Shown piece after piece: positions 935 to 37,782 of a stretch of DNA of 64,000 nt. The notes beneath the pieces were generated by a model that did not search any database, had not been told where the DNA came from, and was given only the letters and a program-made list of their open reading frames with translations. The stretch lies in the IMG/VR virus record IMGVR_UViG_3300044712_002668, positions 186,001-250,000 of that record. One strand, given 5' to 3'. Within the stretch, counting starts at the first letter, position 1. The number at the start of each line of letters is the position of its first letter. The translations under genes were made by a program, and so were the position numbers.

Positions 935-968
935 TAATTTGATATATAAGCGGAACGCGAGTTTAGAA

Positions 969-1037
969 TCACCATTAGTATAATGGCAGTACGGTACTCA
1001 TATGAGTACCAGTGCAGGTTCGAATCCTGTAGGTGAT
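969..1037 (+). pseudogene. degenerate tRNA-like gene (Met-CAT-like relic)
   Basis: D arm GTAT-AATGGCA-GTAC and T arm GCAGG-TTCGAAT-CCTGT are present; acceptor is one base short; anticodon arm is the palindrome GGTACTCATATGAGTACC with no 7-nt loop. Confidence 0.6.
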
Positions 1038-1076
1038 TTATACAAATTTCGTTCCGCTTATTTATTTAAGGGTTAA

Positions 1077-2384: not shown

Positions 2385-2615
2385 GTGGCATCAGATGATA
2401 AACCAAGAGTAGAAGGCTCGATAGAGGCAGCTAGAGGAAACGGATTTTTTGTAGTTGGAGTATTAACTGAAGTTGGTACTGTGACACAAGTTCTGTGTCA
2501 GTTGTCTGGTAAAATGAGGACTCATAATATAAAAATAGTGGAAGGGGATAAGGTTGAAATAGAACTTGATCCTTACAACATGTCAAAAGGTAGAATAATA
2601 TATAGGAAAAAGTGA
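2385..2615 (+). CDS. infA: translation initiation factor IF-1
   Basis: [38 protein letters not shown] matches the IF-1 signature. Confidence 0.93.
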
Positions 2616-3124
2616 TGAAGAAGCCAAGTAATTTTATCCAAAAGGGATTGTTGAGATTTATAGAAGGTGATGCTACAAACCCTACTGGTAGTAGTATGCA
2701 ATATATTTTGCAGGTTTGTAATGATGATGGTTTATATGGGGCAGGATTTTCAGGGGCGCTATCTAAGAGATACCCTCAAGTTGAATCTGAATACAGAAAG
2801 TTTTGGAGAAACAAGTTTGGTAAACTAAAGCTTGGAGAGATTCAGGTTATACAAGTAAAGAGCGATGTTGCTGTTATCAATATGATCGCTCAAAAGGGTG
2901 TTGTTTCCAAAACAAATCCAATACCTTTAGATTTGAAAGCTCTCAAAGAATGTTTATCAAAGGCTGGTACAGAAATCAGCGATAACTCTGCGTCAGCTCA
3001 TATGCCAAGAATTGGCTGTGGTTTGGCTGGAGGTAAATGGGAAGATGTTCAACCGTTAATAGAAGAAGAGTTATTGAAACGCGGGGTAAATGTTACAGTA
3101 TATGATTTACCAGAGGAAAAATGA
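2612..3124 (+). CDS. macro domain protein (ADP-ribose / Appr-1''-p processing; Poa1p/DarG-like)
   Basis: [23 protein letters not shown] and [13 protein letters not shown] motifs. Confidence 0.88.
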
Positions 3125-9370: not shown

Positions 9371-9862
9371 ATGCTTAGAAACTGTTTGTTTTGTGATGTA
9401 GAATTTAATGCTAATGAAAAAGAGGTTAGAAGAGGTAATGGAAAGTTTTGCACTCTTAGTTGTTCTAGCAAGTTTTATAGCAGGGAAAGATCTTTGAAGA
9501 AGATTCCAAATGTAGAATGTGCTCTATGCAAAAAAAAGTTTTATAAATCAAAATCAGATTTTGCTTTATCTAAAAGTGGTCTATTTTTCTGTTGCAGAAA
9601 ACATAAAGATCAAGCTCAAAGAATTGGTGGTATTCGTGCCATTATGCCAGATCACTATGGTACCAGTTTGAAAAAATACAGACAGTTAGCTTTATCTGTA
9701 AAAGACACAAAATGTGAACGATGTGGATATGAACAAAATCCAGCGGCAATAGTTATTCATCATATTGATAAAAATAGAGATAACAATTCTATCGATAATC
9801 TTGAAGTTTTATGTTCTAATTGTCATGCTATAGAGCATTGGGATAGAGCTTGTGGAGAATAG
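9371..9862 (+). CDS. HNH homing endonuclease with N-terminal Cys-rich zinc-binding repeats
   Basis: CERC...IHHIDKNRDNNSIDNLEVLCSNCHAIEH; GAGGAGG RBS; opposite orientation to flanking tRNAs. Confidence 0.9.
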   Translation: MLRNCLFCDVEFNANEKEVRRGNGKFCTLSCSSKFYSRERSLKKIPNVECALCKKKFYKSKSDFALSKSGLFFCCRKHKDQAQRIGGIRAIMPDHYGTSLKKYRQLALSVKDTKCERCGYEQNPAAIVIHHIDKNRDNNSIDNLEVLCSNCHAIEHWDRACGE

Positions 9863-12431: not shown

Positions 12432-12941
12432 TTATATTTGATCTAGTTTTATTAAACCATGATCTAATTCCCAATGACAGTTTCTACAAAGCGGAATTTG
12501 ATTTGATGGATCATTTACCGTTTCCAATAATGTGTTGTCAGGATATTCGTGTAATGGTATTTTATGTGCTAATTCAACATGAATAGAATATCCGCATTTT
12601 TTACATGGCATCTTTGTCATGTTTTTATTCCAGTAACGGTTCAAAGACCTGATCTCGTGATGTAACCAAGATGTATGCCTTCCTTTCTTTTTCTCTTTTT
12701 CTCTAAGTTCTCCGATTGTTTTTTGTTTTGTTGAATATTTTTCACGGCACGTTGCACATGTTTTTGCCCTAACAAAAAGTTCTTTACCACAATGTGTACA
12801 AAAACCTCTTGACTTTTTTAATCTTTTCGGAAACAGTTTGTTATTGTATCGTGCTGCGCAAGATTTTGAACAAAAAACAGGGTTATTTGTTGTTGTATCG
12901 CACTGTTTACACTTTATCAATATCTCATCTGATAATGCCAT
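12432..12941 (-). CDS. HNH homing endonuclease
   Basis: FCSKSCAA zinc repeat; CKKC...ELAHKIP...NQIPLCRNCHWELD. Confidence 0.88.
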   Translation of the reverse strand: MALSDEILIKCKQCDTTTNNPVFCSKSCAARYNNKLFPKRLKKSRGFCTHCGKELFVRAKTCATCREKYSTKQKTIGELREKEKKKGRHTSWLHHEIRSLNRYWNKNMTKMPCKKCGYSIHVELAHKIPLHEYPDNTLLETVNDPSNQIPLCRNCHWELDHGLIKLDQI

Positions 12942-15759: not shown

Positions 15760-15767
15760 GTCTAGTG

Positions 15768-15848
15768 TGAAGTTAAAGAGATTCGAACTCCCACGCCTTT
15801 CGGCAACAGGGCCTAAGCCTGTCGTGTCTGCCATTCCACCATAACTTC
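15768..15848 (-). tRNA. tRNA-Leu(TAG)
   Basis: ACAGG-CTTAGGC-CCTGT, long variable arm. Confidence 0.9.
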
Positions 15849-15849
15849 G

Positions 15850-15933
15850 TGCGCAAGGAGGGACTTGAACCCCCACGCTTTTTGAGCAGCAGATTTTGAG
15901 TCTGCCGTGTCTGCCGAATTCCACCACTTGCGC
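15850..15933 (-). tRNA. tRNA-Leu(CAA)
   Basis: GCAGA-CTCAAAA-TCTGC, long variable arm. Confidence 0.92.
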
Positions 15934-16134: not shown

Positions 16135-16143
16135 ATATAAACG

Positions 16144-16215
16144 TGACCCCAACGGGACTTGAACCCGTACTCCAGCCTTGAAAGGGCCGTCACCTAACCA
16201 TTAGTGGATGGGGCC
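16144..16215 (-). tRNA. tRNA-Glu(TTC)
   Basis: CGGCC-CTTTCAA-GGCTG. Confidence 0.9.
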
Positions 16216-16219
16216 AAAA

Positions 16220-16369
16220 AAGCAACGAAAATGGTGAGACCCTACATGCCTTTCGGCTCCGTCGTGTCTGCCAATTTCACCATACCTCTCTTGCGAGAGA
16301 TAGCGGGACTCGAACCCGCACATCTTTTGGATAACAGTTTTGCAGATGAAAGATCTCAGTCGCGTTGTT
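16220..16369 (-). ncRNA. scaffold RNA copy 1 carrying a circularly permuted class-II tRNA(GCA)
   Basis: P1-GCG-P2-UUUCA|UC scaffold; cargo 16259-16346 is 3' half, GCAA loop, then 5' half. Confidence 0.8.
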
Positions 16370-16372
16370 TAG

Positions 16373-16443
16373 TTGGGGAACTAGGATTCGAACCTAGATA
16401 ACAAGCACCAAAAACTCGTGTCCTGCCATTGGACGATTCCCCA
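16373..16443 (-). tRNA. tRNA-Gln(TTG)
   Basis: TGGGGAA/TTCCCCA, CGAGT-TTTTGGT-GCTTG. Confidence 0.88.
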
Positions 16444-16774: not shown

Positions 16775-18055
16775 CTATTCGTCATCCCAGATGCTATCCG
16801 TCTTGTCCTCTGCCATCGCCCCCATCGACTCCAATTTTACCTCTATCTCAAAAAATGTTGATAACCACTTCTTAAAACTAAGAAATGTTGATGTAACATT
16901 TTCTGTTTTATGTGGTCCTAGTAAAAATTCAGTTATTTCTGGTGTTCCAAAAACTTTCCATAATCCATTATCTGATAAAAATTTCTTTGGAACAACATAA
17001 TCTGAATATGTAAAATTACAAGATAATTTATCTATATGAGTAAACCCTAAAGAAAAATCAGGATCTATTTTACTATTATCTTTAATTATGTTAGAAGCTC
17101 TAAGGGCGTAAAACATAAGCTGTAGATCAAAGTAACCAGTTCTAAGTTTACCCTGCCAAGTACCAGTTACATTATGATCGTCAGAATAAATATGATCTAG
17201 TTTATCTGACTCTGTAGGAAAAGGCCCAGGTCCATGTCTTGTGGGATAAACCCTCAACAAGCCTAATTTCTTAATAGGATCATCATAGTTAGCTTCTTCT
17301 AACAAGGAATAAACGTTATTGAATGTGGTATCAGTCCAAGTATTATATGGAGTGAAACCTACATTCTCATCAAGAAGAACTCCTTGAGCACCTTCAAATA
17401 GAATATTTTCTTGCTGATGTTCAAATACATGTCTTAGATATGCCGAATCAGTTATGTGTAATCCTGACTCAATAAACTGCTGACATCTTTCAATAAAATA
17501 ATCTATCTCTTCTTCAGTACAGCAAATGTCAAAATTGTTTTTTACAATTTCATTTTGAATTCTTACTTTATTGAGTAGAATATTTTTAGTTTGTAAATCT
17601 TTTACTCTTAAAGAGAGATCTGGATAATCTATATTATACTTTACAGTTTCACCGATACCCATACCACAAGAACCATGGCGTTGATTACCACGATCTTGTT
17701 CTCTTTTTTTATTCAGTAGAATATGTACTGGAGTTGTTACTAAAGCTTCCCTATCTACAGATAAACGAAATAGAGGATTGTAAGGTAGGTCTGTTGCTTC
17801 ATTGAGAAGCGCCCCAGGATTTACAATCATATATTTTGACAAGTGTGTAAATACACTAGGCAAAAATGAACCAGCACCAAATTGTGCAAAGGTATGGTGT
17901 TGATCTTTAGTAACTACATTATGAGCGGCTTGTGCGCCGCCATTATATCTTATAACATGTTTTATGTCATATTTTCTGCACAAATAATCTGTAACAGAGC
18001 CTTTGCCCTCATCACCGAAACCAAGCCCGGCAACAGCAATTACTTTTCTGTTCAT
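16775..18055 (-). CDS. purA: adenylosuccinate synthetase
   Basis: GLGFGDEGKG P-loop, RYNGGAQAAH, EGAQG, TRHGPGPFP. Confidence 0.9.
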   Translation of the reverse strand: MNRKVIAVAGLGFGDEGKGSVTDYLCRKYDIKHVIRYNGGAQAAHNVVTKDQHHTFAQFGAGSFLPSVFTHLSKYMIVNPGALLNEATDLPYNPLFRLSVDREALVTTPVHILLNKKREQDRGNQRHGSCGMGIGETVKYNIDYPDLSLRVKDLQTKNILLNKVRIQNEIVKNNFDICCTEEEIDYFIERCQQFIESGLHITDSAYLRHVFEHQQENILFEGAQGVLLDENVGFTPYNTWTDTTFNNVYSLLEEANYDDPIKKLGLLRVYPTRHGPGPFPTESDKLDHIYSDDHNVTGTWQGKLRTGYFDLQLMFYALRASNIIKDNSKIDPDFSLGFTHIDKLSCNFTYSDYVVPKKFLSDNGLWKVFGTPEITEFLLGPHKTENVTSTFLSFKKWLSTFFEIEVKLESMGAMAEDKTDSIWDDE

Positions 18056-18130: not shown

Positions 18131-18136
18131 AATGAG

Positions 18137-18206
18137 TCGGCTTGTCAGGATTTCCACCTGAATCGCCCTGTACAATCAGGGGCTTTGAGAATTAAGCTAC
18201 AAGCCG
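18137..18206 (-). pseudogene. tRNA-Pro-like gene with aberrant 6-nt anticodon loop
   Basis: CGGCTTG/CAAGCCG-A73 (Pro identity); anticodon arm CCCTG-ATTGTA-CAGGG. Confidence 0.6.
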
Positions 18207-18237: not shown

Positions 18238-19179
18238 TCATGTACCAGTAGAAACACCAGAAGCTTTTGATTTGGCCAGAGCATCAAGAGCGCCAGTTAC
18301 AACACTAATGGCATCCTTTGATACACCGGACTCTTCCAAATCTTTTGCCATATCTCCAGCAGTTCCCTCAATCAAAGCGATTGATAAACCAATGGATTCG
18401 CAAACAAGACTTGGATCTTGTAGCATGATAACGTTCTCACCACCAAGAAGATCTACCCATGTCTTTTTTAGAACAGGATCTGAGTAGTGGCTTGTACCAG
18501 AAGGGATGACAAAGAAGATGTGATACTTCTTTTGAGCCTCAGCAATGACATCCTTGATTGGCAAATCTTGCGGAACATCATCACCAAATAGACGGGCAAT
18601 CTCTGCTTTTGTACATTTCGGATATGGCTTTTCATCGCCAATCAAAAACAGATAACCTTTTTTATTTCGCTTTTCAAGGCAATCAATGGAAGTGTGATGA
18701 GCCATGAAGTAAATGGCGTTTTGATAGCTCTCTTCATACGAGCCACCTCCACCACCTTCAAGCCACATATTTGTAAGATCATTATCCATCTCAATTCCAG
18801 ATTCAAACTGTCCAATCTGGATTGACCCATGATCTGAATAATAATCCCCTACAGCACCAAATAGTACCTGAGGATCTTTAATGTATCCTCTTTGTAAAAG
18901 AAGTTCCATAAGCTTGGGAAGCTTCTTTTGCATTTGATGAGGAACCCTATGCATGGATCCTGTTACATCAAAAATTACAGCAATTGCGGTAGATTCAGGA
19001 TGAGCTTCAGAATCACGGCTTTCGCGATTCTTTCCAAATGGATTCAAAGACTCATGTACTTTGGCTGCTGTTTGACCGGATCTGATTTTATCAGAATATT
19101 CAAACGCATCCACACCACGGCGAGAACGGTCTGCTGTTCTACTGACGTAGTGATCATCACTCCAACTGGAACTTCCCAT
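18238..19179 (-). CDS. von Willebrand factor A domain protein
   Basis: MIDAS-like FDVTGSM; GGGGSYEESY; LFLIGDE. Confidence 0.85.
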   Translation of the reverse strand: MGSSSWSDDHYVSRTADRSRRGVDAFEYSDKIRSGQTAAKVHESLNPFGKNRESRDSEAHPESTAIAVIFDVTGSMHRVPHQMQKKLPKLMELLLQRGYIKDPQVLFGAVGDYYSDHGSIQIGQFESGIEMDNDLTNMWLEGGGGGSYEESYQNAIYFMAHHTSIDCLEKRNKKGYLFLIGDEKPYPKCTKAEIARLFGDDVPQDLPIKDVIAEAQKKYHIFFVIPSGTSHYSDPVLKKTWVDLLGGENVIMLQDPSLVCESIGLSIALIEGTAGDMAKDLEESGVSKDAISVVTGALDALAKSKASGVSTGT

Positions 19180-26312: not shown

Positions 26313-26386
26313 TACCGCAAAGTGGACTCGAACCACCATCCTTTTTCTTATGAGGAAAACGCTCAAACCAATTGAGCTATTGCGGT
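26313..26386 (-). tRNA. tRNA-Met(CAT)
   Basis: ACCGCAA/TTGCGGT, TTTTC-CTCATAA-GAAAA. Confidence 0.88.
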
Positions 26387-26391
26387 ATATA

Positions 26392-26496
26392 ATAGCGAAA
26401 ATGGTGTGACAAATGGGAACCGTCCCGTATTTAGGCCCGGAGTCGAACCGATGCCCTCCAATTTTGGCGGAGATGAAATGTCACGAACGCGCTACT
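26392..26496 (-). ncRNA. scaffold RNA copy 2 (degenerate T-arm cargo)
   Basis: UAGC-GCG...GACA-UUUCAUC...UGUC...UUUC-GCUA. Confidence 0.75.
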
Positions 26497-26498
26497 AG

Positions 26499-26581
26499 TG
26501 CCATTGACAGGATTCGAACCTGCATGAGAAAACTCGTCACGTTCTTAGCGTGATATGTATACCAAATTCCATCACAATGGC
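26499..26581 (-). tRNA. tRNA-Leu(AAG)
   Basis: TCACG-CTAAGAA-CGTGA, Leu-type D arm and variable arm. Confidence 0.85.
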
Positions 26582-26586
26582 ATGAA

Positions 26587-26760
26587 GATAACGAAAAGAT
26601 TGTCAGACGGGGTTTTTGCACTAGCCTCCCCGATGATTGTAAATTGAGACTTATTTACTACTAGCAAAACTAGCATCTCAATTTTGGTCGGGGCCGGGAA
26701 TCGCACCACGGTTTCTGTATTTTTCTGATATAGATGAACCATCCAACTATGCGCGTTATC
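26587..26760 (-). ncRNA. scaffold RNA copy 3 carrying a permuted tRNA-Pro-like cargo
   Basis: GAUAAC-GCG...GAUGG-UUCAUC; T arm + CCCCGACCA, hairpin linker, then UCGGGG. Confidence 0.75.
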
Positions 26761-26762
26761 TG

Positions 26763-26845
26763 TGCCGTCAACAGGACTCGAACCTGCATGAGAAATCTCG
26801 ATAGTTTTTAAAACTATTGTGTATACCAAATTCCACCATAACGGC
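26763..26845 (-). tRNA. tRNA-Leu(TAA)
   Basis: ATAGT-TTTAAAA-ACTAT. Confidence 0.9.
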
Positions 26846-26852
26846 TAAAATT

Positions 26853-27060
26853 AAAACAACGAAAAGGGCTCAGACGAAGTTTTTCCAGCATCCGGCCACC
26901 GCAAAAAGCATATTTTAGTTTCGGTTATGTTTCCGAACTCATCTCATCTCTGTCATTCCTGAATAGAAATCGGGGATGAGTACCGCGCGGCGTAAGGGAG
27001 TCGAACCCTCATCGTTTGATTCGTAGTTCAAGATGAATCGTCCAAAAATCGCGTTGTTTT
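26853..27060 (-). ncRNA. scaffold RNA copy 4 carrying a permuted tRNA-Arg(ACG)-like cargo
   Basis: AACAAC-GCG...GACGA-UUCAUC; CU-ACG-AA loop, T arm, ACGCCGC, linker, GCGGUG. Confidence 0.75.
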
Positions 27061-27063
27061 TAG

Positions 27064-27139
27064 ATGCGGGTCTTGGATTTGAACCAAGGGAACTAGGCTT
27101 ATGAGACCCAGGAGTTAGGCCGGACTACTCTAACCCGCA
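27064..27139 (-). tRNA. tRNA-Met(CAT), initiator-like
   Basis: TGCGGGT/ACCCGCA, TGGGT-CTCATAA-GCCTA, fMet-like D arm GAGT/ACTC. Confidence 0.82.
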
Positions 27140-27146
27140 ATAATGT

Positions 27147-27268
27147 AAGTAACGTAAAGATCGAGACCCTACATGCCCACATGGGCGATTCCCCAGGTAA
27201 AGAACCTCGAAAGGTTCGGCGGGGAATTAAGTTTCGAGCTTAGATGAAAGATCCCTAACGCGTTACTT
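27147..27268 (-). ncRNA. scaffold RNA copy 5 (structured non-tRNA cargo)
   Basis: AAGUAAC-GCG...GAUC-UUUCAUC...GGUC...UUAC-GUUACUU. Confidence 0.75.
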
Positions 27269-27305
27269 GGTATAACATATAACATTATATTATATGTTAT
27301 TTAGA

Positions 27306-27427
27306 AACAACGAAATTATATTGACAATGGGCCGGTATTTTTAGCACCGTTCTCCTTTGACCCAGACCGGAATTGAACCGGTTCTCGCCCTAATTTTTGA
27401 TGGATGTAATGTCAATAGCGCGTTGTT
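27306..27427 (-). ncRNA. scaffold RNA copy 6 (T arm plus acceptor-strand cargo)
   Basis: AACAAC-GCG...GACA-UUACAUC...ACCGG-UUCAAUU-CCGGU...UGUC...UUUC-GUUGUU. Confidence 0.75.
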
Positions 27428-27429
27428 AG

Positions 27430-27502
27430 TCTCCCAGGAAGGATTTAAACCTCCGGCCTAAACGTTCGTAGCGTTCCGCTCTATTCGCTGAGCTACTGGG
27501 AG
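27430..27502 (-). tRNA. tRNA-Arg(ACG)
   Basis: CTCCCAG/CTGGGAG, GAACG-CTACGAA-CGTTT. Confidence 0.88.
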
Positions 27503-27867
27503 AATTTATATAAATCTCTATCATTGCCTTTTTTACAAAGTACAAACCCTAACTTTGTATGTGACTTTATCGATGCAATATTATCATGTTTTATAATTGC
27601 GTATAAATGATCCAACTTTTCTGTTTTTATCAGCTCATCATACATTATATTTGAATATCCTTTACCTCTATATTCTGGTTTTATTTCAATATGAGAGCAC
27701 TTTTTACCATCGTATTCAAACACACCAACTTCACCTATTTGTTTATCATTACTGTAAACTGAATATAAATGACCTGGCAGATTATATATAGTATTGCCAA
27801 CAAGTTTTAATTGGGTTTTAATTGACGCTTGTTTGTAATAAATGTTTATATAATCATCAAGATACAT
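27493..27867 (-). CDS. GNAT-family acetyltransferase
   Basis: IEIKPEYRGKGYS acetyl-CoA motif, NIASIKSHTKLGF. Confidence 0.85.
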   Translation of the reverse strand: MYLDDYINIYYKQASIKTQLKLVGNTIYNLPGHLYSVYSNDKQIGEVGVFEYDGKKCSHIEIKPEYRGKGYSNIMYDELIKTEKLDHLYAIIKHDNIASIKSHTKLGFVLCKKGNDRDLYKFSQ

Positions 27868-27900
27868 ATTGTAAAGTTACAAAAATATGCATATAACAGG

Positions 27901-27983
27901 CTCCTGAGGAAAGACTCGAACTTCCATAATCCTTACGGATGACACGTTAACAGCGTGCTGCATTACCATTATGCTACCCAGGA
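27901..27983 (-). tRNA. tRNA-Asn(GTT) with long variable arm
   Basis: TCCTGGG/CTCAGGA-G73, GCACG-CTGTTAA-CGTGT, extra arm ATCC-GTAA-GGAT. Confidence 0.8.
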
Positions 27984-27988
27984 ATAAA

Positions 27989-28130
27989 CTTGACGAAAAG
28001 CTTGAAGACCATTTTTTTTCGCGCTTTACTATTAAGCTATATGAGCAAGAGTTTGATTTGCGCTCATATCGGGACTTGCACCCGAAACTTCGTCATTAAC
28101 AGTGATGAACGATCTTCTAATCGCGTCAAG
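27989..28130 (-). ncRNA. scaffold RNA copy 7 carrying a circularly permuted tRNA-Asn(GUU)
   Basis: cargo 28020-28105; joining CG|UCA gives an unbroken cloverleaf. Confidence 0.85.
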
Positions 28131-28132
28131 AG

Positions 28133-28205
28133 CGATCTGGACGGGAGTTGAACCCGCACAATACACTTCGACAGAGTGTTGCACTACCAATTGTGCTACC
28201 AGACC
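28133..28205 (-). tRNA. tRNA-Asp(GTC)
   Basis: ACACT-CTGTCGA-AGTGT, G73. Confidence 0.9.
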
Positions 28206-28210
28206 AAACG

Positions 28211-28285
28211 TGGGTTATCCCGGTAACGATCCGGGGAATTCTTCTACTTAAGAGGTAGTTGCTGTTCCATTCTAGCTTATAACCC
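28211..28285 (-). tRNA. tRNA-Lys(CTT)
   Basis: GGGTTAT/ATAACCC, CTAC-CTCTTAA-GTAG; T loop ATCGTTA. Confidence 0.8.
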
Positions 28286-28289
28286 ATAA

Positions 28290-28369
28290 CTTAACGAAAA
28301 TGTAAAAGACCTTTTTGTTTTTTAATTTTTCATATTAATTTTAGATGAAAGATCCTTCAGCGCGTTAAG
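28290..28369 (-). ncRNA. scaffold RNA copy 8 (minimal AU-rich cargo)
   Basis: CUUAAC-GCG...GAUC-UUUCAUC-(about 30 nt AU-rich)-GGUC...UUUC-GUUAAG. Confidence 0.75.
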
Positions 28370-28371
28370 AG

Positions 28372-28446
28372 TGGGCCCAGCCGGTAACGATCCGGCGAAT
28401 TCTTCTGCTTAAAAGGCAGCTGCTGTTCCATTCTAGCTTTAGGCCC
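28372..28446 (-). tRNA. tRNA-Lys(TTT)
   Basis: GGGCCTA/TGGGCCC, CTGC-CTTTTAA-GCAG; T loop ATCGTTA. Confidence 0.8.
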
Positions 28447-28452
28447 AATATG

Positions 28453-28568
28453 ATATGACGAAAAATTAATGACCTGTTTTTTCAGCGGGACTTGAACCCA
28501 CAAATGTTTCCGTATAGGGGAAATGCTTTAACCAATTTAGCGATGAAAGGTCATTCAGCGCGTCATAT
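28453..28568 (-). ncRNA. scaffold RNA copy 9 carrying an acceptor-less tRNA body (UAU)
   Basis: D arm, UUUCC-CCUAUAC-GGAAA and T arm lie directly between UUUCAUC and GGUC. Confidence 0.75.
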
Positions 28569-28644
28569 TGGTCCCGTCCCCTGGTTTCGCGCCAGGCTCC
28601 CTTGCTCTTCAGGCAAATGCTTTCACTAGATTAGCTTAGACGGG
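28569..28644 (-). tRNA. tRNA-Phe(GAA)
   Basis: TTTGC-CTGAAGA-GCAAG, encoded CCA; T loop CGCGAAA. Confidence 0.82.
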
Positions 28645-28652
28645 ATAATAGT

Positions 28653-28808
28653 AGATAACGAAAAATTGAAAAACCCTTTTTTACGCGCTCTGACCAACTG
28701 AGCTATCTGCCTATTTTGGGTTCAATTAAGAACCTTGTAGGCAGAATTGGATTCGAACCAATGACATCGTCCTTATAATGGATGAAAGATTTTTCTACCG
28801 CGTTATCT
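28653..28808 (-). ncRNA. scaffold RNA copy 10 carrying a circularly permuted tRNA-Ile(UAU)
   Basis: cargo 28684-28782; joining CG|UCC restores CGUCC/GGACG. Confidence 0.82.
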
Positions 28809-28809
28809 G

Positions 28810-28894
28810 TGGGGCTGATAGGATTCGAACCTACTAGGCCAATCGGCCGACAGTTTTACAGACTGTTGCAACTCTCCCGCTTTGCCGCAACCCC
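28810..28894 (-). tRNA. tRNA-Tyr(GTA)
   Basis: ACAGT-CTGTAAA-ACTGT, long variable arm. Confidence 0.9.
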
Positions 28895-29756: not shown

Positions 29757-30370
29757 GTTCTATAAATGGATCAATATCTGTTCCTGGTGCATTGATACTG
29801 GTAAATAATGATTTATCAAGTACAATACAATCTCGTTTAATGACTCAATTATATATAGATGAGGCAATTACTGGAACAGAATTTGATGCTAGAATGATAG
29901 CAGATCCTAATTACGCCCATAATGTTAGAGTTCTAAGAAATAGAATAATGGTAATACGAAGCTTTCAAGATAGTTTTGACAGATCACCTTTTGATGTGGT
30001 TATATTTGTAAAGTTTGCATTAGCTTCAATAGAGAAAAATTGCTTCGGCCCACCACATCAAACTTTTCAAATAAAAAATTTGTACTGGGGTCAATTGTGT
30101 ATCCATGATATCGATACTACAAGATCTTGCCAAAATAAAGCTTGCGGTTGCTACACCGGACAATGTCCCCAAAATAGTTGCTGTACCCCTTGTAATACAA
30201 ATGGCCCTCTATATCCAGATCCTAACCCATTCCTTCCAAAAGATTATAACAAATACCATCCATTCTCATCACAACCTAATTGTGGATGTTGTAATGAAAA
30301 CCGCCCAAGAGAACTATGGTGTACCGCCGATGGTTGTGTTCCCTATATAGATATACCTCTCAAGAAATAA
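29753..30370 (+). CDS. hypothetical protein with Cys-rich C-terminus
   Basis: 205 aa; about 12 Cys in the last 95 aa. Confidence 0.6.
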   Translation: MSSINGSISVPGALILVNNDLSSTIQSRLMTQLYIDEAITGTEFDARMIADPNYAHNVRVLRNRIMVIRSFQDSFDRSPFDVVIFVKFALASIEKNCFGPPHQTFQIKNLYWGQLCIHDIDTTRSCQNKACGCYTGQCPQNSCCTPCNTNGPLYPDPNPFLPKDYNKYHPFSSQPNCGCCNENRPRELWCTADGCVPYIDIPLKK

Positions 30371-30938
30371 ATGTTGGTATCTTTATACAACACTCATTTA
30401 TCTTATTAAATAATTTGTTTTCCCATTGATACTTTACAGTGTCAGTAGAAACATATGGCATATACATTTGACGGAATGAATCAACATTATTTTTAAGACT
30501 AGAAACTTTATATTTCAGATTATTATTATCAGTAGTGTTGGTTGTGGTAGCATCAAGAGCACCTGGAGCAGGGGGAGTAGATGAGGTTGCCGGGGTGTTT
30601 TCTGGGGTACTAGGGGTTTGGGCATTAGGGTCTATGACAGGAGTTGTAGGAAGGGATTGAACACCAACAGATTTTAATATACCCACCGCTGACTCTTTGA
30701 GATTCTTTGCTAATCTCAGAGCTTCCGGGTTTGTTATTTTATTAGAATAGTTTTTTGTTTGATTTGCTACATCTTGATTTTTTTGAACATATTTCAATAA
30801 ATCATCAAGCTGTTGAGCCAACACCATTGTCCAGTTTTTCAACTGCATGGCGGAAGTAGCGTTAACAGCTTTAATATACAACTCAGCAAATTTCTCAACT
30901 CTCATATCATTATAAGTAAAATTTACCATGTTAAACAA
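30360..30938 (-). CDS. hypothetical protein
   Basis: 192-aa ORF with a Thr/Pro-rich linker. Confidence 0.6.
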   Translation of the reverse strand: MFNMVNFTYNDMRVEKFAELYIKAVNATSAMQLKNWTMVLAQQLDDLLKYVQKNQDVANQTKNYSNKITNPEALRLAKNLKESAVGILKSVGVQSLPTTPVIDPNAQTPSTPENTPATSSTPPAPGALDATTTNTTDNNNLKYKVSSLKNNVDSFRQMYMPYVSTDTVKYQWENKLFNKINECCIKIPTFIS

Positions 30939-30960
30939 AAAAGCCCTCTTGCGAGGGCTT
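30937..30960 (-). terminator. rho-independent terminator
   Basis: AGCCCTC-GCAA-GAGGGCT plus TTTTT. Confidence 0.8.
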
Positions 30961-30983
30961 TCGGAGAAAATACGTTGTCTACT

Positions 30984-31523
30984 CTACTGTAGCCTTGGAT
31001 CAAACTTCCAGATCAACTTCTTTCCACCTTTGTATCCAGGTGGAGGAGTGACTTCTTCTGGCTTACAAGTATCCCTGAGATGAGCATATAGTTTCTGATA
31101 GTTGATATCAGGCTGATTCAAAGCATCTTTGATTTCATTGATGCTCATGGGTTTCTTTGATAGAAGCGCCTTGATCTTATCCACTGGCAATGGCGGATAT
31201 ACCTTTGATTTCTTCTTCTCACCCCTGCGCTTTTCTACTTGCCTTACATTGACAGAGGAACTTATACCCTTCAATGTCTTGGCCGCTTCCATCATCTTTA
31301 TAGCTTGCTCGCCAATAAAGTTGATGACCTTCTCCCTGAATTGAGAATCATTCAACCACTTGGAAGTGAATTGGGCTTCTGCAATATGAGTTGGAATCTC
31401 AGCCCCTTCTACCATCCAATTGGTATCTTCCCACATCAAATCCCAAATTCCACTTTTTTGAAAAGTGTTAAAAAGAATATCTTTGATATTGAGAAAAGCT
31501 TGATTCTCATGCTGCGAAGACAT
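30984..31523 (-). CDS. hypothetical protein, possible C-terminal winged helix
   Basis: KALLSKKPMSINEIKDAL...YQKLYAHL pattern. Confidence 0.5.
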   Translation of the reverse strand: MSSQHENQAFLNIKDILFNTFQKSGIWDLMWEDTNWMVEGAEIPTHIAEAQFTSKWLNDSQFREKVINFIGEQAIKMMEAAKTLKGISSSVNVRQVEKRRGEKKKSKVYPPLPVDKIKALLSKKPMSINEIKDALNQPDINYQKLYAHLRDTCKPEEVTPPPGYKGGKKLIWKFDPRLQ

Positions 31524-32142
31524 CTTTATTCTTCCCTTCCAGGTACTCGCTCAGAATGGCTACCAATAATTGATTATCATTCAAGTTTTGACCAAAATCC
31601 TTACGAGCCTGTTTAATAGCTTTCTTGAATATCCTCTCTTCAGAAATCTGAATCTTCACAAAGCTTTTCTTTATTGCCTTCTTGTGCGGCTTCAAGAATG
31701 ACTTGAAAGCTTCACTTGAAACCTTCTTGGCAAGCTTCATGTATTCTTTGAAATTGCCGCTATCAATGATTGGCGTTAATGCAATCATTTTATGAATATC
31801 CAGCATATGTTTCTCTGGATCAAACAAATCCACAAGTTCTACACAGAACTTGGAATAGACATCTGCATATTTCTTGGCCTTGCTGTACAAAAGCAAAAGC
31901 TCGTTTTCAATATAATCCTTCCATGATTCGTATCCGTAGAATTCGTATAGCGGAATCTTGTCATTACCATAATTTACATATGAAATCTTTGAAAAAAACA
32001 GGAACTTACAGAACTCAAGATCTTGAGATCCTTTTGTAAGAATAATATTCTTTATTCTTGTCTTGAATTCTTTAGCAGAATTTTGGGATAACGCTTCTTC
32101 AACAGGATTGATGGTTAGATCGCCAATCTTGATCGTATGCAT
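31507..32142 (-). CDS. hypothetical protein
   Basis: 211-aa ORF. Confidence 0.6.
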   Translation of the reverse strand: MHTIKIGDLTINPVEEALSQNSAKEFKTRIKNIILTKGSQDLEFCKFLFFSKISYVNYGNDKIPLYEFYGYESWKDYIENELLLLYSKAKKYADVYSKFCVELVDLFDPEKHMLDIHKMIALTPIIDSGNFKEYMKLAKKVSSEAFKSFLKPHKKAIKKSFVKIQISEERIFKKAIKQARKDFGQNLNDNQLLVAILSEYLEGKNKDVFAA

Positions 32143-32432: not shown

Positions 32433-33791
32433 TTATAGTTTTGCAGCAGCCAATTCGGCCAACGGGGAACGTTCGCATTTTGATAAAGTAATATGTCCAA
32501 CCATTTCTTCATCTTTCATCTTCTCTATAGCTAAAGAAAAACCGTTTGTTTTCTTATCAAGATAGTGAGCATCGATTTGTTCTGGGTCACCGGTCAATAC
32601 TATTTTTGTTTTCTCACCACATCTTGTAATCAAAGTTTTAATCTCATGTAATGTAGTATTCTGCATTTCATCGGCTATGATGAATTGACATGGTAAGCTT
32701 CTTCCACGAATGTATGTCAATGGTTCAACTTTGATTTTCTCTTGTTCGAATAGTTGTCCATAATCCATTCCTGTTTTTTTCTTTCCACCCAACATCATAA
32801 TCAATTCAAGGTTGTCATAGATGGGCTGCATCCAGGGATCCATCTTCTCTCCCATATCTCCAGGTAGGAATCCTAAATCCTTTCCCATTGGCATAACCGG
32901 ACGGCTTACAATCATCTTCGTATAACCACCCTCTATAAATGTTTTATAGAACCCAGCACAAATGGCAAGTAAACTTTTACCACCACCAGCCGATCCAGAT
33001 AGGGTTACCATTTTAACATCGTCATCCAATAATAAATCCAATGCAAATTGTTGTTCCCTGTTCTTTGGTTTGATTCCCATCACCCCCTCTTTAGGAACTT
33101 TCAATGGACATATCTTTTTATATTTTCCAATGTACCTTCCTAAAGCTGTCCTTCCCATATCACTTCTCATCGCAATACAGGCATTAGGATATAAATCAAT
33201 ACCAGCAGGAGGAAGGATAGCTCCAGCTTTAAACATCTCATTTATATAAGAATCTTCAACCTCTAAATCTATAATGCCAGATATAAGCTGATCAGGGTCT
33301 ATTGATTGATTTTCATATGAAGCCGATTGTATTCCTAGACTGTCAGCACGAATGCGTAAGTTTACATCCATGGTGACTAGAATAGCTCTCAACTCTTGGC
33401 TCTCCTTTATATCAAGAGCTGATTGTAGGATGGCGTTGTCCATGCTGTTGTTCTCCATGCCAACACCAAGAAAACGTCTCTCACGGGGCACGTAGACCTT
33501 TAAAATACCATCCCCTACCGGTACTCCGTCTGATAAACTTCCTTCGCAACGCAACTCGTCAATCAAACGGCAGGCTTCCCGCGCTCCTCTCCCACGTATG
33601 CTCTGCTCTGATTTCAATTTATCAAGCTCTTCAAGCACATATATGGGGACATATAAATTGTTATCCTCAAATTTAAAAATAGATCTTGGATCGTGAATTA
33701 AAACATTCGTATCAAGAATATAACTTTTTTTTGTCAAAAGGACCTCTTTAGGGAGAATTTTATCTCCCTTCTTAATACCAGTATATGCCAA
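32433..33791 (-). CDS. phoH: PIN-PhoH (PhoH2/YlaK-like) protein
   Basis: PIN ILDTNVLIHD...VLEELD; PhoH GSAGGGKS, PLTYIRGRSL, DEMQN, LTGDPEQID. Confidence 0.9.
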   Translation of the reverse strand: MAYTGIKKGDKILPKEVLLTKKSYILDTNVLIHDPRSIFKFEDNNLYVPIYVLEELDKLKSEQSIRGRGAREACRLIDELRCEGSLSDGVPVGDGILKVYVPRERRFLGVGMENNSMDNAILQSALDIKESQELRAILVTMDVNLRIRADSLGIQSASYENQSIDPDQLISGIIDLEVEDSYINEMFKAGAILPPAGIDLYPNACIAMRSDMGRTALGRYIGKYKKICPLKVPKEGVMGIKPKNREQQFALDLLLDDDVKMVTLSGSAGGGKSLLAICAGFYKTFIEGGYTKMIVSRPVMPMGKDLGFLPGDMGEKMDPWMQPIYDNLELIMMLGGKKKTGMDYGQLFEQEKIKVEPLTYIRGRSLPCQFIIADEMQNTTLHEIKTLITRCGEKTKIVLTGDPEQIDAHYLDKKTNGFSLAIEKMKDEEMVGHITLSKCERSPLAELAAAKL

Positions 33792-36931: not shown

Positions 36932-37477
36932 TCATTCTTCCACGTATGGGATCAAGGCTATGTACTTTGGCTCAACCTCTTCTACCAACCATACACCATT
37001 GTCACTACAATAAAACTTCTTCCCAGCCTTATACATCTTCCCGGCATCTACAGATAATAACATCGGCTTCCCATGTCTTTTTCCAACCTCCCAGGCTACA
37101 CTCTTGTCCTTACTCAAATGTACATGATGCCTGTCCCCCTTGATTATACCCTTCTCAAATATGGATTTTACATTCCTTGTAGCCGTTCCATGATACAATT
37201 CCTCCGGCGGCTCTGTCTCCTTATACCCCAAATCTACATCTATACTATGCCCCTGTACCGCCCTTATCTTCTTTCCATCTTCACTGAAACTAAATCTCTT
37301 TTTGTTGTTGTTCTCTACTATTTCTTTCAATTCATCCAAACTAATACTTTTCCCTACACTCTTCAAACCTTTCAATAAATCAGATACACTTACCCACCCA
37401 CCAGCATCCAATACTATCCCGGCTTTTGATGGTTCATGCCTCAATACCAAACTTAAAAAACGGCTCAAATTTTTCAT
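36932..37477 (-). CDS. kptA: RNA 2'-phosphotransferase (Tpt1/KptA)
   Basis: SRFLSLVLRH, KKRF, IRAVQGHS, LYHGT, RHHVHLS and NGVWL motifs. Confidence 0.95.
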   Translation of the reverse strand: MKNLSRFLSLVLRHEPSKAGIVLDAGGWVSVSDLLKGLKSVGKSISLDELKEIVENNNKKRFSFSEDGKKIRAVQGHSIDVDLGYKETEPPEELYHGTATRNVKSIFEKGIIKGDRHHVHLSKDKSVAWEVGKRHGKPMLLSVDAGKMYKAGKKFYCSDNGVWLVEEVEPKYIALIPYVEE

Positions 37478-37782
37478 CCAAAAATCATCCTGTATATAAT
37501 GTAAAGGATTCCAACTTGCAAAAACCATTGCATTCTTAAAAAAATCCCCCTAATCCATAACCTCCTATAACATCGTAATAATAAATTAATTCTCAATCCC
37601 TCAAGCTCATCCAATGTCAATTCTTGATTGAGCTGTTTATAGTTTATCATTACCGCAAAGATAAATTTATCTATCTTGCCCTTCATCTCTATCCAGGCAA
37701 AATATGGAGAAAATATCACTATCGGATGTGCCCCCAAAACCAATTCTATCTTCTCCTCTAAATACTTCTCTACATCATCCAT
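37474..37782 (-). CDS. hypothetical protein
   Basis: ORF coupled to its neighbours. Confidence 0.45.
   Translation of the reverse strand: MDDVEKYLEEKIELVLGAHPIVIFSPYFAWIEMKGKIDKFIFAVMINYKQLNQELTLDELEGLRINLLLRCYRRLWIRGIFLRMQWFLQVGILYIIYRMIFG

What the first reader, a model, noticed from the sequence alone, without database searches (positions are those of the whole stretch)
16259..16346. Permuted Cys-anticodon tRNA with a class-II body and an acceptor closed by a GNRA tetraloop
Seen: the cargo reads U31-CU-GCA-AA-ACUGU, long variable arm, T arm, UAUCUCUC-GCAA-GAGAGGUA, Leu-like D arm, then ACGG. Joining gives ACGG|U/ACUGU with five pairs. The acceptor can be drawn as 8 bp with G73. Established: 8-bp acceptors with long variable arms typify tRNA-Sec and the selC*/allo-tRNA groups, some with GCA anticodons. 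Inference: an unusual tRNA that might be charged with something other than Cys, or remain a closed circular mimic because the 4-nt linker is a poor RNase P substrate.
Basis: partly seen in the sequence, partly recalled or inferred. Interest (0 to 1): 0.82.

Follow-up and report, generated by a model that had tools for sequence, protein, structure and literature searches.

The report
Phage Y RNA that mimics tRNA
The "permuted tRNA" is real in the sequence, but it is most likely one of more than a dozen phage-encoded Y RNAs: tRNA look-alikes carried on a conserved stem that probably binds the phage's own Ro60 protein, rather than a tRNA that reads Cys codons.

Summary
On the minus strand, 16346→16259 reads anticodon-like loop, V arm, T arm, an 8-bp acceptor closed by GCAA, a Leu-like D arm, then ACGG. 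Joined in silico it scores as a tRNA (ARAGORN 117.8; 0 of 2000 shuffles).

It is not an isolated oddity. It is one of 10 cassettes in the window, and 38 across four huge-phage contigs, that share one frame: outer stem …AACG/CGUU…, an internal loop (CG opposite UUUU), a covarying second stem, then NUUCA|UC and a variable cargo.

This is the architecture of YrlA-type bacterial and phage Y RNAs:
- Several paralogous cassettes match Rfam YrlA over its full length, at 30–45 bits, below the gathering score of 69.
- The same contig encodes a Ro60/Rsr orthologue 2.7 kb before the window. An RNase T-like exonuclease gene precedes it and three cassettes follow it.
- Four of four Ro60 loci examined show the same linkage.

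An orthologue in another phage keeps every helix, with three double compensatory changes in the acceptor. Its "anticodon" loop differs, so the Cys reading is not conserved.

Best reading: a non-decoding tRNA mimic on a Ro60 handle. It belongs to a divergent, expanded Y RNA subfamily that Rfam does not capture. A truly permuted, ligated tRNA remains a minority possibility, because no RNA data were available.

The parts
16363..16371 (-). P1, 5' strand of the outer stem (UAAACAACG), ending in the family-wide AACG
   Evidence: It pairs with 16219-16227. Positions 5-7 of P1 show 4-6 different pair types across 38 cassettes. The natural variant 16368 T>C (plus strand) repairs the only mismatch.
16359..16362 (-). 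5' side of the conserved internal loop (CG + AC)
   Evidence: CG is invariant in all cassettes. It occupies the place of the CGAA/GNCGAA motif of known Y RNAs (PMC4201824, PMC12135203).
16352..16358 (-). P2, 5' strand of the second stem (UGAGAUC)
   Evidence: It pairs with 16235-16241. P2 covaries between cassettes: the longest helix averages 7.0 bp with the true partner and 4.2 bp with mismatched partners.
16347..16351 (-). Conserved 5' linker UUUCA (NUUCA in the family)
   Evidence: Present in all cassettes. In this copy it can pair with UGUAG of the 3' linker (reading of the sequence).
16338..16346 (-). Conserved UC plus UGCAAAA: a single-stranded linker that looks like U31 plus the anticodon loop CUGCAAA if the ends are joined
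   Evidence: The orthologue has UC-UUGUAAAA at this place.
16334..16337 (-). Junction-closing stem, 3' strand (CUGU), equivalent to anticodon-stem positions 40-43
   Evidence: It pairs with ACGG at 16259-16262. G·U becomes A-U in the orthologue.
16320..16333 (-). Variable-arm mimic (UAUC-CAAAA-GAUG-U)
   Evidence: A 4-bp stem here, but only 2 bp in the orthologue, one of them changed on both sides (U-A to C-G). This part is weakly supported.
16303..16319 (-). T arm (GCGGG UUCGAGU CCCGC)
   Evidence: Rfam tRNA fragment hit at 16303-16323. Found as an orphan T arm. Identical in the orthologue.
16283..16302 (-). Acceptor-stem mimic: 8 bp closed by the GCAA tetraloop (16291-16294)
   Evidence: In the orthologue three pairs change on both sides and one on one side, and the loop is 12-13 nt.
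16263..16282 (-). U8 G9, the D arm (GUG AAAUUGGCAGA CAC) and G26
   Evidence: The joined 84-nt sequence is most similar to the phage's own tRNA-Leu genes (61-62 of 84 positions identical to Leu-UAG and Leu-CAA), and its D loop AAAUUGGCAGA is identical to that of the neighbouring tRNA-Leu(UAA). Stems are conserved in the orthologue.
16259..16262 (-). Junction-closing stem, 5' strand (ACGG), equivalent to anticodon-stem positions 27-30
16242..16258 (-). 3' linker: A, the hairpin GCC-GAAA-GGC, then AUGUAG
   Evidence: The same hairpin and linker occur in cassettes of two other phages (L010, L135) and, in similar form, at window 27143-27272. It contains GCCGAAAG, which fits GNCGAAN0-1G but lies on the 3' side.
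16235..16241 (-). P2, 3' strand (GGUCUCA)
16228..16234 (-). 3' side of the conserved internal loop (CCA + UUUU)
   Evidence: The U run is conserved in all cassettes.
16219..16227 (-). P1, 3' strand (CGUUGCUUU)
26386..28812 (-). Nine paralogous cassettes with the same frame and different cargoes: 28649-28812, 28449-28572, 28285-28374, 27984-28135, 27301-27432, 27143-27272, 26850-27063, 26582-26765, 26386-26501
   Evidence: The cassette at 28657-28795 matches Rfam YrlA over positions 1-114 of 114 at 33.1 bits.

Best explanation
The element is the tRNA-like module of a phage Y RNA of the YrlA type.

The unit. The transcript unit is about 150 nt (16371→16219, minus strand). It lies between tRNA-Gln and tRNA-Glu in a polycistronic tRNA array.

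The handle. The leader and trailer pair into a two-helix handle: outer stem P1, an asymmetric internal loop with invariant CG opposite UUUU, and second stem P2.

The module. A short junction stem (ACGG/CUGU) then carries a V arm, a T arm, a closed acceptor-like hairpin and a D arm. That is a tRNA body opened at the anticodon end and closed at the acceptor end.

Inferred mechanism:
- The handle is the binding site of the phage's own Ro60/Rsr protein.
- The tRNA-like module is the effector end. It may tether Ro60 to a partner: an exoribonuclease such as host PNPase or the phage RNase T-like enzyme encoded next to Ro60. Alternatively it may engage or decoy tRNA-binding proteins, including host tRNA-cleaving defence nucleases.
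- The RNA stays linear, is not aminoacylated and does not decode. Its Cys-like loop is a relic of, or a mimic derived from, a class II tRNA-Leu-like ancestor.

Shown: the sequence anatomy, the paralogous family, covariation of the helices, the sub-threshold homology of paralogous cassettes (not this copy) to YrlA, and the genetic linkage to Ro60.

Inferred: Ro60 binding, the linear state, and the function.
For: - Anatomy is V-T-acceptor-D on a leader-trailer stem, as in YrlA (PMC4201824).
- The same frame occurs in 10 cassettes of the window and in 38 unique cassettes from four huge-phage contigs, with P1 and P2 covariation.
- Rfam YrlA (RF02553) aligns over its full length to paralogous cassettes at significant E-values: window 28657-28795 at 33.1 bits (E 6.5e-6), L015 at 45.2 bits, L126 at 42.3 bits, L135 at 37.8 bits.
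- The same contig encodes a 531-aa Ro60/Rsr orthologue. Pfam vWA_Ro60 scores above its cut-off, and PDB 2nvo (Rsr) matches at E 1.6e-8 over residues 33-494. Phage 'Ro-like RNA binding proteins' are its best matches among deposited phage genomes.
- Three cassettes with the identical frame lie 1-1.6 kb downstream of that gene on the same strand.
- In 4 of 4 loci examined that encode this Ro60 family, one or more cassettes lie 0.9-2.8 kb downstream on the same strand, and an RNase_T exonuclease gene lies just upstream.
- The best blastn match of the element among deposited phage genomes lies in a row of three permuted tRNA-like RNAs just downstream of the annotated Ro-like gene of Arthrobacter phage Atuin.
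- The orthologue in L135 keeps all helices through compensatory changes but not the anticodon-like loop.
- The Ile-UAU-like and Asn-GUU-like cargoes duplicate ordinary tRNAs of the same phage, and other cargoes have only a T arm or no tRNA features. This resembles the YrlA/YrlB pair.
- A population variant repairs the single P1 mismatch.
Against: - This copy gets no Rfam YrlA hit, even at E ≤ 10.
- It lies about 19 kb from the Ro60 gene and on the opposite strand.
- The canonical GNCGAAN0-1G/CGAA motif is not at its expected 5' position. The frame has AACG-CG there, and GCCGAAAG occurs only in the 3' linker.
- The thermodynamic MFE (-47.6 kcal/mol) prefers another fold over the YrlA-like model (-35 to -39 kcal/mol). 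The MFE-specific pairing is not conserved in the orthologue.
- In about ten cassettes an in-silico join at the same frame position (CA|UC) completes a 5-bp anticodon stem, perfect in several of them, with a canonical 7-nt loop and a discriminator base that fits the anticodon. That is more tRNA-likeness than a mere mimic needs.
- No RNA data and no binding data are available.
Confidence: 0.68

Rival explanations
1. It is a genuinely permuted tRNA gene. An endonuclease cuts the frame off at CA|UC and at ACGG|A, and an RNA ligase seals the nick in the anticodon stem. The acceptor loop is then opened by RNase P and 3' trimming, and CCA is added. The product is a class-II, 8/5 tRNA with anticodon GCA. 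It would probably be charged by an anticodon-blind synthetase (LeuRS or SerRS) rather than by CysRS.
For: - The joined sequence scores 117.8 in ARAGORN.
- In eight to ten cassettes of four phages the best join falls at the same frame position. It completes anticodon stems from both ends (CG|UCC/GGACG, CG|UCA/UGACG, C|UCCG/UGGAG), with discriminators that fit the anticodon (A73 for Ile and Met, G73 for Asn). One case has an encoded CCA.
- No ordinary tRNA-Cys is present in the window.
- The window encodes Tpt1/KptA (NCBIfam 249 bits, above cut-off) and a Macro domain protein, the enzymes that clean up 2'-phosphate splice junctions.
- M. smegmatis YrlA is cleaved by RNase P and receives CCA in vivo (PMC4201824).
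Against: - The orthologue has a different, 8-nt loop unless the cut site shifts.
- The best join offsets are not constant across the family (+4, -3, -5 in some cassettes).
- The L010 Asn-like copy has A33.
- The GCAA tetraloop leaves no leader or trailer for RNase P and 3' processing.
- G or C follows the stem, not the U73 that CysRS needs (established knowledge).
- No bulge-helix-bulge motif can be drawn, and no ligase or splicing endonuclease was found in the window. The 858-aa and 430-aa neighbours of Tpt1 have no ligase signature.
- The frame also carries non-tRNA cargoes and is linked to Ro60.
Confidence: 0.12
2. The frame is a generic RNA-processing or circularisation cassette, a small ribozyme or a nuclease recognition site, that releases cargo RNAs as stable or circular species. 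Ro60 plays no part, and the linkage to it is incidental.
For: - Strictly conserved single-stranded motifs flank every cargo: CG, UUUU and NUUCA|UC.
- Cargoes are very diverse, 24-170 nt.
- Leader and trailer bring the two ends together.
Against: - No Rfam ribozyme family matches, even at E ≤ 10.
- The motifs do not fit the hammerhead (CUGANGA/GAAA) or hairpin (N|GUC) cores, by reading of the sequence.
- About 50 nt of frame would have to make two cuts and one ligation.
- Several cassettes align over the full length of the YrlA model, and the Ro60 linkage is seen in 4 of 4 loci.
Confidence: 0.08
3. It is a decaying remnant of a tandem tRNA duplication, made of the 3' half of one copy and the 5' half of the next, and has no function.
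For: - The body is closest to the phage's own tRNA-Leu genes next door.
- Tandem tRNAs can imitate the T-then-D order (PMC4201824; Aeromonas phage hits).
Against: - The two 'halves' form a perfect 8-bp hairpin with a 4-nt loop.
- An orthologue in another phage keeps it through three double compensatory changes.
- The conserved frame around it recurs 38 times.
- The sequence is identical or nearly identical in samples from three studies.
Confidence: 0.03

Closest known systems
YrlA (Y RNA-like A; Rfam RF02553) of bacteria and phages: Salmonella, Mycobacterium smegmatis, cluster C mycobacteriophages (Chen et al. 2014, PMC4201824; structure preprint 10.1101/312249)
   Same: - 5' and 3' ends pair into a stem, internal loop, stem handle.
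- The module on top is a tRNA body in the order V-T-acceptor-D with a closed acceptor hairpin.
- It is encoded with other small RNAs near a Ro60 gene.
- Companions with only a T arm exist (YrlB-like).
- Paralogous cassettes align over the full length of the Rfam model at E down to 6e-7.
   Different: - Scores stay far below the gathering threshold, and this copy is not detected at all.
- The conserved handle motif is AACG-CG…UUUU plus NUUCA-UC, not GNCGAAN0-1G.
- There are at least 13 copies per genome, scattered through tRNA arrays up to 40 kb from Ro60 and on either strand, instead of 1-4 next to rsr.
- Many cargoes add a complete anticodon hairpin with a sensible anticodon.
- Acceptor loops are often long and structured.
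- This copy has a class-II (Leu-like) body.
Phage Ro60-Y RNA systems: Thermus phage phiLo φRo60 with Yrl1/Yrl2 (PMC12135203), and TROVE proteins of jumbo phages (PMC7824862)
   Same: A phage-encoded Ro60 with Y RNA-like genes beside it, in a genome that also carries many tRNAs and RNA-repair genes (KptA, Macro).
   Different: The phiLo Yrls are described as stem-bulge-stem RNAs with a CGAA motif and no reported tRNA array context. Here the RNAs are modular, numerous and embedded among tRNAs. Binding has not been tested.
Permuted tRNA genes of Cyanidioschyzon merolae, some green algae and Thermofilum pendens (own knowledge; mentioned in PMC4238349 and PMC3400036, listed)
   Same: The 3' half lies upstream of the 5' half, the acceptor ends are linked by a short intervening sequence, and leader and trailer pair.
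   Different: Those genes rely on a bulge-helix-bulge motif, the archaeal/eukaryal splicing endonuclease and a circular intermediate. Here no BHB can be drawn, the host is bacterial, and the frame is homologous to a Y RNA handle.
tRNA-Sec and allo-tRNAs with 8/5, 8/4 or 9/3 helices
   Same: The acceptor can be drawn as 8 bp with a 5-bp T stem. A long variable region is present, and G follows the stem in both orthologues.
   Different: The D arm is Leu-like (3-bp stem, 11-nt loop), not the 6-bp/4-nt arm of tRNA-Sec. The acceptor is closed and has no CCA. The anticodon-like loop is not conserved.

Membership tests
YrlA-type Y RNA (RF02553) | tRNA-like module in the order (V)-T arm-acceptor hairpin-D arm, with tRNA-invariant T-loop and D-loop nucleotides | tested here: met
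   UUCGAGU T loop, GG in the D loop, U8, closed 8-bp acceptor hairpin. ARAGORN gives 117.8 after rearrangement.
YrlA-type Y RNA (RF02553) | 5' and 3' ends pair into a stem, internal loop, stem handle (the Ro60-binding module) | tested here: met
   P1 (9 positions, one mismatch that a natural variant repairs) and P2 (7 bp) flank a CG…/…UUUU loop. Both stems covary across 38 cassettes.
YrlA-type Y RNA (RF02553) | GNCGAAN0-1G (CGAA) motif on the 5' strand at the internal loop | tested here: not met
   The 5' strand has AACG-CG-AC at that place. GCCGAAAG exists, but in the 3' linker at 16249-16256.
YrlA-type Y RNA (RF02553) | Encoded within about 4 kb of a Ro60/TROVE gene on the same strand | tested here: inconclusive
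   This copy lies about 19 kb from the Ro60 gene on the opposite strand. Three paralogues with the same frame lie 1-1.6 kb downstream of Ro60 on the same strand. The same linkage holds in three other phages.
YrlA-type Y RNA (RF02553) | Rfam covariance model score at or above the gathering score (69 bits) | tested here: not met
   No hit for this copy at E ≤ 10. Paralogues reach 29.7-45.2 bits, several over the full model, with E down to 6e-7.
YrlA-type Y RNA (RF02553) | Bound by Ro60/Rsr in vivo and carrying tRNA-type modifications (TruB, DusA) | not testable with these tools
   No RNA run could be listed. This needs co-immunoprecipitation or EMSA.
Permuted tRNA gene (C. merolae / Thermofilum type) | 3' half upstream of the 5' half; the joined product folds as a canonical tRNA | tested here: met
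Permuted tRNA gene (C. merolae / Thermofilum type) | Bulge-helix-bulge motif formed by leader and trailer at the processing sites | tested here: not met
   By reading of the sequence, the junction is a three-way junction. One version has a 2-nt versus 5-nt internal loop. The other has a paired UUUCA/UGUAG linker plus a hairpin. No 3-nt/4-bp/3-nt arrangement can be drawn.
Permuted tRNA gene (C. merolae / Thermofilum type) | Circular intermediate or junction-spanning reads | not testable with these tools
   Only DNA runs hold the sequence.
tRNA-Sec / allo-tRNA | 13 bp in acceptor plus T stems (8/5, 8/4+1 or 9/3) | tested here: met
   The 8-bp acceptor helix is kept in the orthologue through three double changes, and the T stem is 5 bp.
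tRNA-Sec / allo-tRNA | Sec-type D arm (6-bp stem, 4-nt loop) or another allo-tRNA D-arm signature | tested here: not met
   The D arm has a 3-bp stem and an 11-nt loop. The loop AAAUUGGCAGA is identical to that of the neighbouring tRNA-Leu(UAA), and the joined body is closest overall to the phage's tRNA-Leu(UAG) and tRNA-Leu(CAA).
tRNA-Sec / allo-tRNA | Free CCA 3' end and aminoacylation | not testable with these tools
   The gene closes the stem with GCAA and encodes no CCA. This needs biochemical assays.

The most novel reading that the evidence does not exclude
The cassettes are not only mimics but precursors. The Y RNA-like handle, with Ro60 and the phage's RNA-repair enzymes (an unidentified nuclease and ligase, plus Tpt1 and Macro), would hold the two ends of a permuted tRNA together so that they can be cut and sealed in the anticodon stem. 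Huge phages would thereby make a private set of tRNAs, including class-II bodies with arbitrary anticodons (GCA, UGU, CUA). These would exist only when the phage machinery is present and would be invisible to gene finders and perhaps to host anticodon nucleases. That would be the first permuted tRNA genes outside eukaryotes and archaea, and a concrete function for the tRNA-like domain of Y RNAs.
Probability: 0.1. Interest if true: 0.92.

Novelty: new variant of a known kind. Interest (0 to 1): 0.5.

Why it matters
Y RNAs that mimic tRNA are known, but what their tRNA-like domain does is still an open question.

This phage lineage offers a natural experiment. One conserved handle carries dozens of different cargoes:
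- full tRNA look-alikes with different anticodon-like loops;
- modules with only a T arm;
- short unstructured inserts.

All sit next to ordinary tRNAs, a Ro60 gene paired with an exonuclease gene, and RNA-repair genes.

The family is missed by tRNA finders and by Rfam at curated thresholds. Huge-phage tRNA arrays are therefore probably under-annotated for these RNAs. The Ro60 family itself has at least 90 clusters in metagenomes.

If the RNAs act as decoys or adaptors for tRNA-targeting host defences, they add a new layer to phage counter-defence. If they are processed into working tRNAs, they would be a new route of tRNA biogenesis in the bacterial world.

Tried and rejected
- Ribozyme reading. 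CUGAGA in the leader and GAAA in the trailer resemble hammerhead core motifs. However, CUGAGA lies in the variable P2 strand, and the conserved CUGCAAA does not fit CUGANGA. No ribozyme family appears in Rfam at E ≤ 10.
- Bulge-helix-bulge splicing motif. None can be drawn from the sequence.
- Alternative helix CAUC/GAUG, which would put the break at 26/27. It is possible in this copy but not in the orthologue, where GAUG is CGUU.
- Trl1-like ligase next to Tpt1. The 858-aa and 430-aa neighbours have no Pfam, NCBIfam, PDB or useful PHROG match and no ligase or kinase motifs.
- Expression evidence. No RNA run could be listed. The DNA runs only confirm the arrangement.
- Close relatives among deposited phage genomes. 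Megablast found none, and blastn found only the Atuin lead.
- Orthologues in JGI metagenome contigs. One pattern gave nothing. The other gave only two copies of a different cassette plus chance hits.
- Short 5'-motif pattern in IMG/VR. It was swamped by chance matches, so hits were filtered by P1/P2 pairing.
- Stop-codon reassignment as an explanation for odd tRNAs. There is no convincing signal. Only one TAG-separated ORF pair was found, at 30360-31550.
- A leave-one-out covariance model of the cassette family was considered but not built.

Full report
**What is in the sequence**

The window is part of IMG/VR contig IMGVR_UViG_3300044712_002668 (336 kb), from a rhizosphere metagenome. The window corresponds to contig positions 186001-250000. 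Its minus strand carries about 36 tRNA genes between 6.7 and 29 kb.

The finding lies in a 157-nt gap between tRNA-Gln (16372-16443) and tRNA-Glu (16143-16215). No tRNA finder or Rfam family calls anything there except a fragment of a T arm.

- UC-UGCAAA-A and CUGU;
- a 14-nt variable region;
- a canonical T arm;
- an 8-bp hairpin closed by GCAA;
- U8 G9 and a Leu-type D arm;
- G26 and ACGG.

Joined end to end, these 88 nt are called tRNA-Cys(GCA) by ARAGORN with a score of 117.8. That is above the median (115.1) of the window's 34 ordinary tRNAs, and none of 2000 shuffled circles gives a tRNA call. The joined body is most similar to the phage's own tRNA-Leu genes nearby, Leu(UAG) at 15767-15848 and Leu(CAA) at 15849-15933.

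Contigs of four DNA runs from three studies carry the same arrangement.

**It is one of a family**

A search for orphan T arms and a reading of the other gaps in the tRNA array showed that the element's flanks recur. Ten cassettes in the window share one frame. All are on the minus strand, nine of them between 26.4 and 28.8 kb. The frame consists of:
- an outer stem P1 that ends in …A(A/G)CG and pairs with CG(U/C)U…;
- an internal loop with invariant CG on the 5' side and a U run on the 3' side;
- a second stem P2, often …GAUC/GGUC…;
- the linker NUUCA followed by UC;
- a cargo of 24-170 nt;
- an A-rich or hairpin-containing 3' linker that leads back to P2.

The 5' motif occurs 9 times in the window against 0.56 expected.

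Pattern scans of IMG/VR found the same cassettes in tRNA arrays of three other large phage contigs of 169, 208 and 219 kb. That makes 38 distinct cassettes in all.

P1 positions 5-7 show four to six different Watson-Crick or wobble pair types with almost no mismatches. P2 forms on average 7.0 uninterrupted pairs with its own partner and 4.2 with partners from other cassettes.

In the finding's own copy the single P1 mismatch (A·C) is repaired to G-C by the only substitution seen in two freshwater samples (16368 T>C on the plus strand).

**What the family is**

The layout is that of YrlA, the tRNA-mimicking Y RNA of bacteria and phages that binds the Ro60 orthologue Rsr (Chen et al. 2014, PMC4201824). 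It comprises paired ends, an asymmetric internal loop, a second stem, a short junction stem, then V, T, closed acceptor and D.

Four independent results support homology and not just resemblance.

1. Rfam's YrlA model aligns over its whole length to paralogous cassettes at significant E-values, always below the curated threshold of 69 bits. The scores are 33.1 bits at window 28657-28795, and 45.2, 42.3 and 37.8 bits in the other phages.
2. The best blastn match of the element among deposited phage genomes lies in Arthrobacter phage Atuin. It sits in a row of three permuted tRNA-like RNAs immediately downstream of the annotated Ro-like protein. One of the three is itself a partial YrlA hit.
3. 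The window's own contig encodes a 531-aa Ro60/Rsr orthologue 2.7 kb before the window starts.
   - Pfam vWA_Ro60 scores above its cut-off, and D. radiodurans Rsr (PDB 2nvo) matches at E 1.6e-8 over residues 33-494. Its best matches among phage genomes are "Ro-like RNA binding proteins".
   - An RNase T-like exonuclease gene precedes it. Three cassettes with the identical frame, two tRNAs and a terminator-like hairpin follow it within 1-1.6 kb on the same strand.
4. This Ro60 belongs to a family of at least 90 sequence clusters found on large contigs of up to about 455 kb. In all four loci examined the gene order exonuclease, Ro60, cassette(s) is kept.

**The finding's copy within that family**

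Its cargo is the most YrlA-like in topology. A 4-bp junction stem (ACGG/CUGU) carries V, T, a tetraloop-closed acceptor hairpin and D. The "anticodon loop" is simply the single-stranded linker between the conserved UUUCA-UC and the junction stem.

An orthologue exists in the 219-kb contig (L135:7569-7723, minus strand):
- The T arm and the D stems are identical.
- The junction stem changes G·U to A-U.
- The acceptor helix keeps 8 bp through three double changes and one single change.
- Its loop grows from 4 to 12-13 nt.
- The small GCC-GAAA-GGC hairpin in the 3' linker is kept.
- The anticodon-like stretch reads CUUGUAAA instead of CUGCAAA, and the V stem shrinks to two pairs.

A related class-II cargo in another phage carries CUA at that place.

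The tRNA shape is therefore under selection, while the Cys anticodon is not. Rfam's YrlA model does not detect this copy, probably because of its class-II D and V arms.

The thermodynamic MFE prefers a different fold (-47.6 against -35 to -39 kcal/mol). That fold uses a pairing of the D region with UCACC of the trailer, which is absent from the orthologue.

**Mechanism proposed**

Shown: the anatomy, the family, covariation, sub-threshold homology to YrlA, and linkage to Ro60 and an exonuclease gene.

Inferred from what is established for Ro60/Y RNA particles:
- Y RNA tethers Ro60 to PNPase in Deinococcus and Salmonella.
- A phage Ro60 with its Yrl RNAs binds host PNPase (PMC12135203).
- TROVE proteins and KptA belong to jumbo-phage RNA-repair repertoires (PMC7824862).

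On that basis the leader-trailer handle binds the phage Ro60, and the tRNA-like module recruits or decoys a tRNA-binding partner. The array of different cargoes would provide different specificities. The window also encodes Tpt1/KptA, a Macro domain protein and a PIN-PhoH protein. These fit a tRNA damage and repair context but are not tied to this RNA by any result here.

**The main rival**

In about ten cassettes the best in-silico join falls at the same frame position (CA|UC). It completes an anticodon stem from the two transcript ends, with a 7-nt loop and a discriminator base that suits the anticodon. One case has an encoded CCA. This is what a permuted tRNA gene would look like, and M. 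smegmatis YrlA is known to be cut by RNase P and to receive CCA.

A stem that continues across a three-way junction is, however, equally expected for an uncut mimic. Several other points also weigh against the rival:
- The join offset is not constant (+4, -3, -5 in some cassettes).
- One Asn-like copy has A33.
- The orthologue of this copy changes its loop.
- The Ile- and Asn-like cargoes duplicate ordinary tRNAs of the same phage.
- No BHB motif, endonuclease or ligase was found.
- The GCAA tetraloop leaves nothing for RNase P to remove.

I give this reading about 0.1. No RNA data could be obtained to settle it.

**Verdict**

It is best filed as a divergent, expanded variant of a known kind: a YrlA-type Y RNA of Ro60-encoding huge phages. 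It is not a Cys-decoding permuted tRNA and not a circular RNA.

Membership in Rfam's YrlA family is not met by the curated criteria of score, 5' motif and, for this copy, distance to Ro60. "Works like and descends from YrlA" is better supported than "is a YrlA".

Noticed in passing
window 26386-28812 (minus strand); also L153:6608-7169 (+): There are nine further cassettes with the same frame, plus three next to the Ro60 gene. Their cargoes range from full tRNA look-alikes to T-arm-only modules and short A/U-rich inserts. The look-alikes include Ile-UAU-like at 28649-28812 and Asn-GUU-like at 27984-28135, both duplicating ordinary tRNAs. The cassette at 28449-28572 is called an ordinary tRNA-Ile(UAU) by ARAGORN and Rfam, with the conserved UUUCA serving as the acceptor strand.
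   Followed up: partly
L131:4168-4305 (-), contig IMGVR_UViG_3300009095_001812: A class-II cassette cargo related to the finding gives, when joined, a high-scoring tRNA with the amber-reading anticodon CUA (ARAGORN 116.3, labelled 'Pyl').
   Followed up: no
window 36932-37528 (-), 2612-3124 (+), 32433-33791 (-): RNA 2'-phosphotransferase Tpt1/KptA (NCBIfam equivalog 249 bits, above cut-off), a Macro domain protein and a PIN-PhoH protein are encoded here. Together they are typical of jumbo-phage RNA-repair gene sets. No RNA ligase was found in the ORFs scanned.
   Followed up: partly
L153:2924-3616 (+), upstream of Ro60 at L153:4001-5596; same order in L154, L156, L157: A DEDD/RNase T-like exonuclease gene sits just upstream of the Ro60 gene in all four phages examined. 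It is a candidate nuclease partner, analogous to PNPase in Ro60/Y RNA particles.
   Followed up: partly
window ~40000-64000: There is an abrupt change of composition. GC rises from 0.35-0.39 to 0.44-0.56, and GC skew flips from about -0.5 to +0.4. ORFs become short and overlap on both strands. No stop-codon reassignment explains it.
   Followed up: partly
window 16775-18055 (-) and 18238-19179 (-): A PurA-like adenylosuccinate synthetase and a PHROG 2971 protein sit side by side. The same two proteins match positions about 1-2 kb apart in cluster C mycobacteriophages (34-39% identity). These are the same phages in which YrlA RNAs and Ro60 were first reported.
   Followed up: partly
window 967-1039 (+) and 18136-18206 (-): ARAGORN calls two tRNA-like genes with abnormal two-base 'anticodons' (ta, tg), meaning anticodon loops of odd length. 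The first also scores 34 bits with Rfam tRNA (seen in L153).
   Followed up: no
window 30360-31550 (-): Two ORFs of 208 and 188 codons lie in one frame, separated only by a TAG. It could be a read-through or a broken gene. No Pfam family explains either piece.
   Followed up: no
window 9371-9862 (+), 12432-12941 (-): HNH endonuclease genes are interspersed in the tRNA array.
   Followed up: no
P0001: The identical Ro60 protein is recorded on a contig of 454,833 bp. The phage genome may therefore be well above the 336 kb of the IMG/VR contig.
   Followed up: no
L010:3272-3344 (-), L015:8512-8584 (-): Elements called tRNA-Ala(UGC) by ARAGORN also give partial Rfam tmRNA hits (38 and 28 bits, below the gathering score) in the related phages' arrays.
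   Followed up: no
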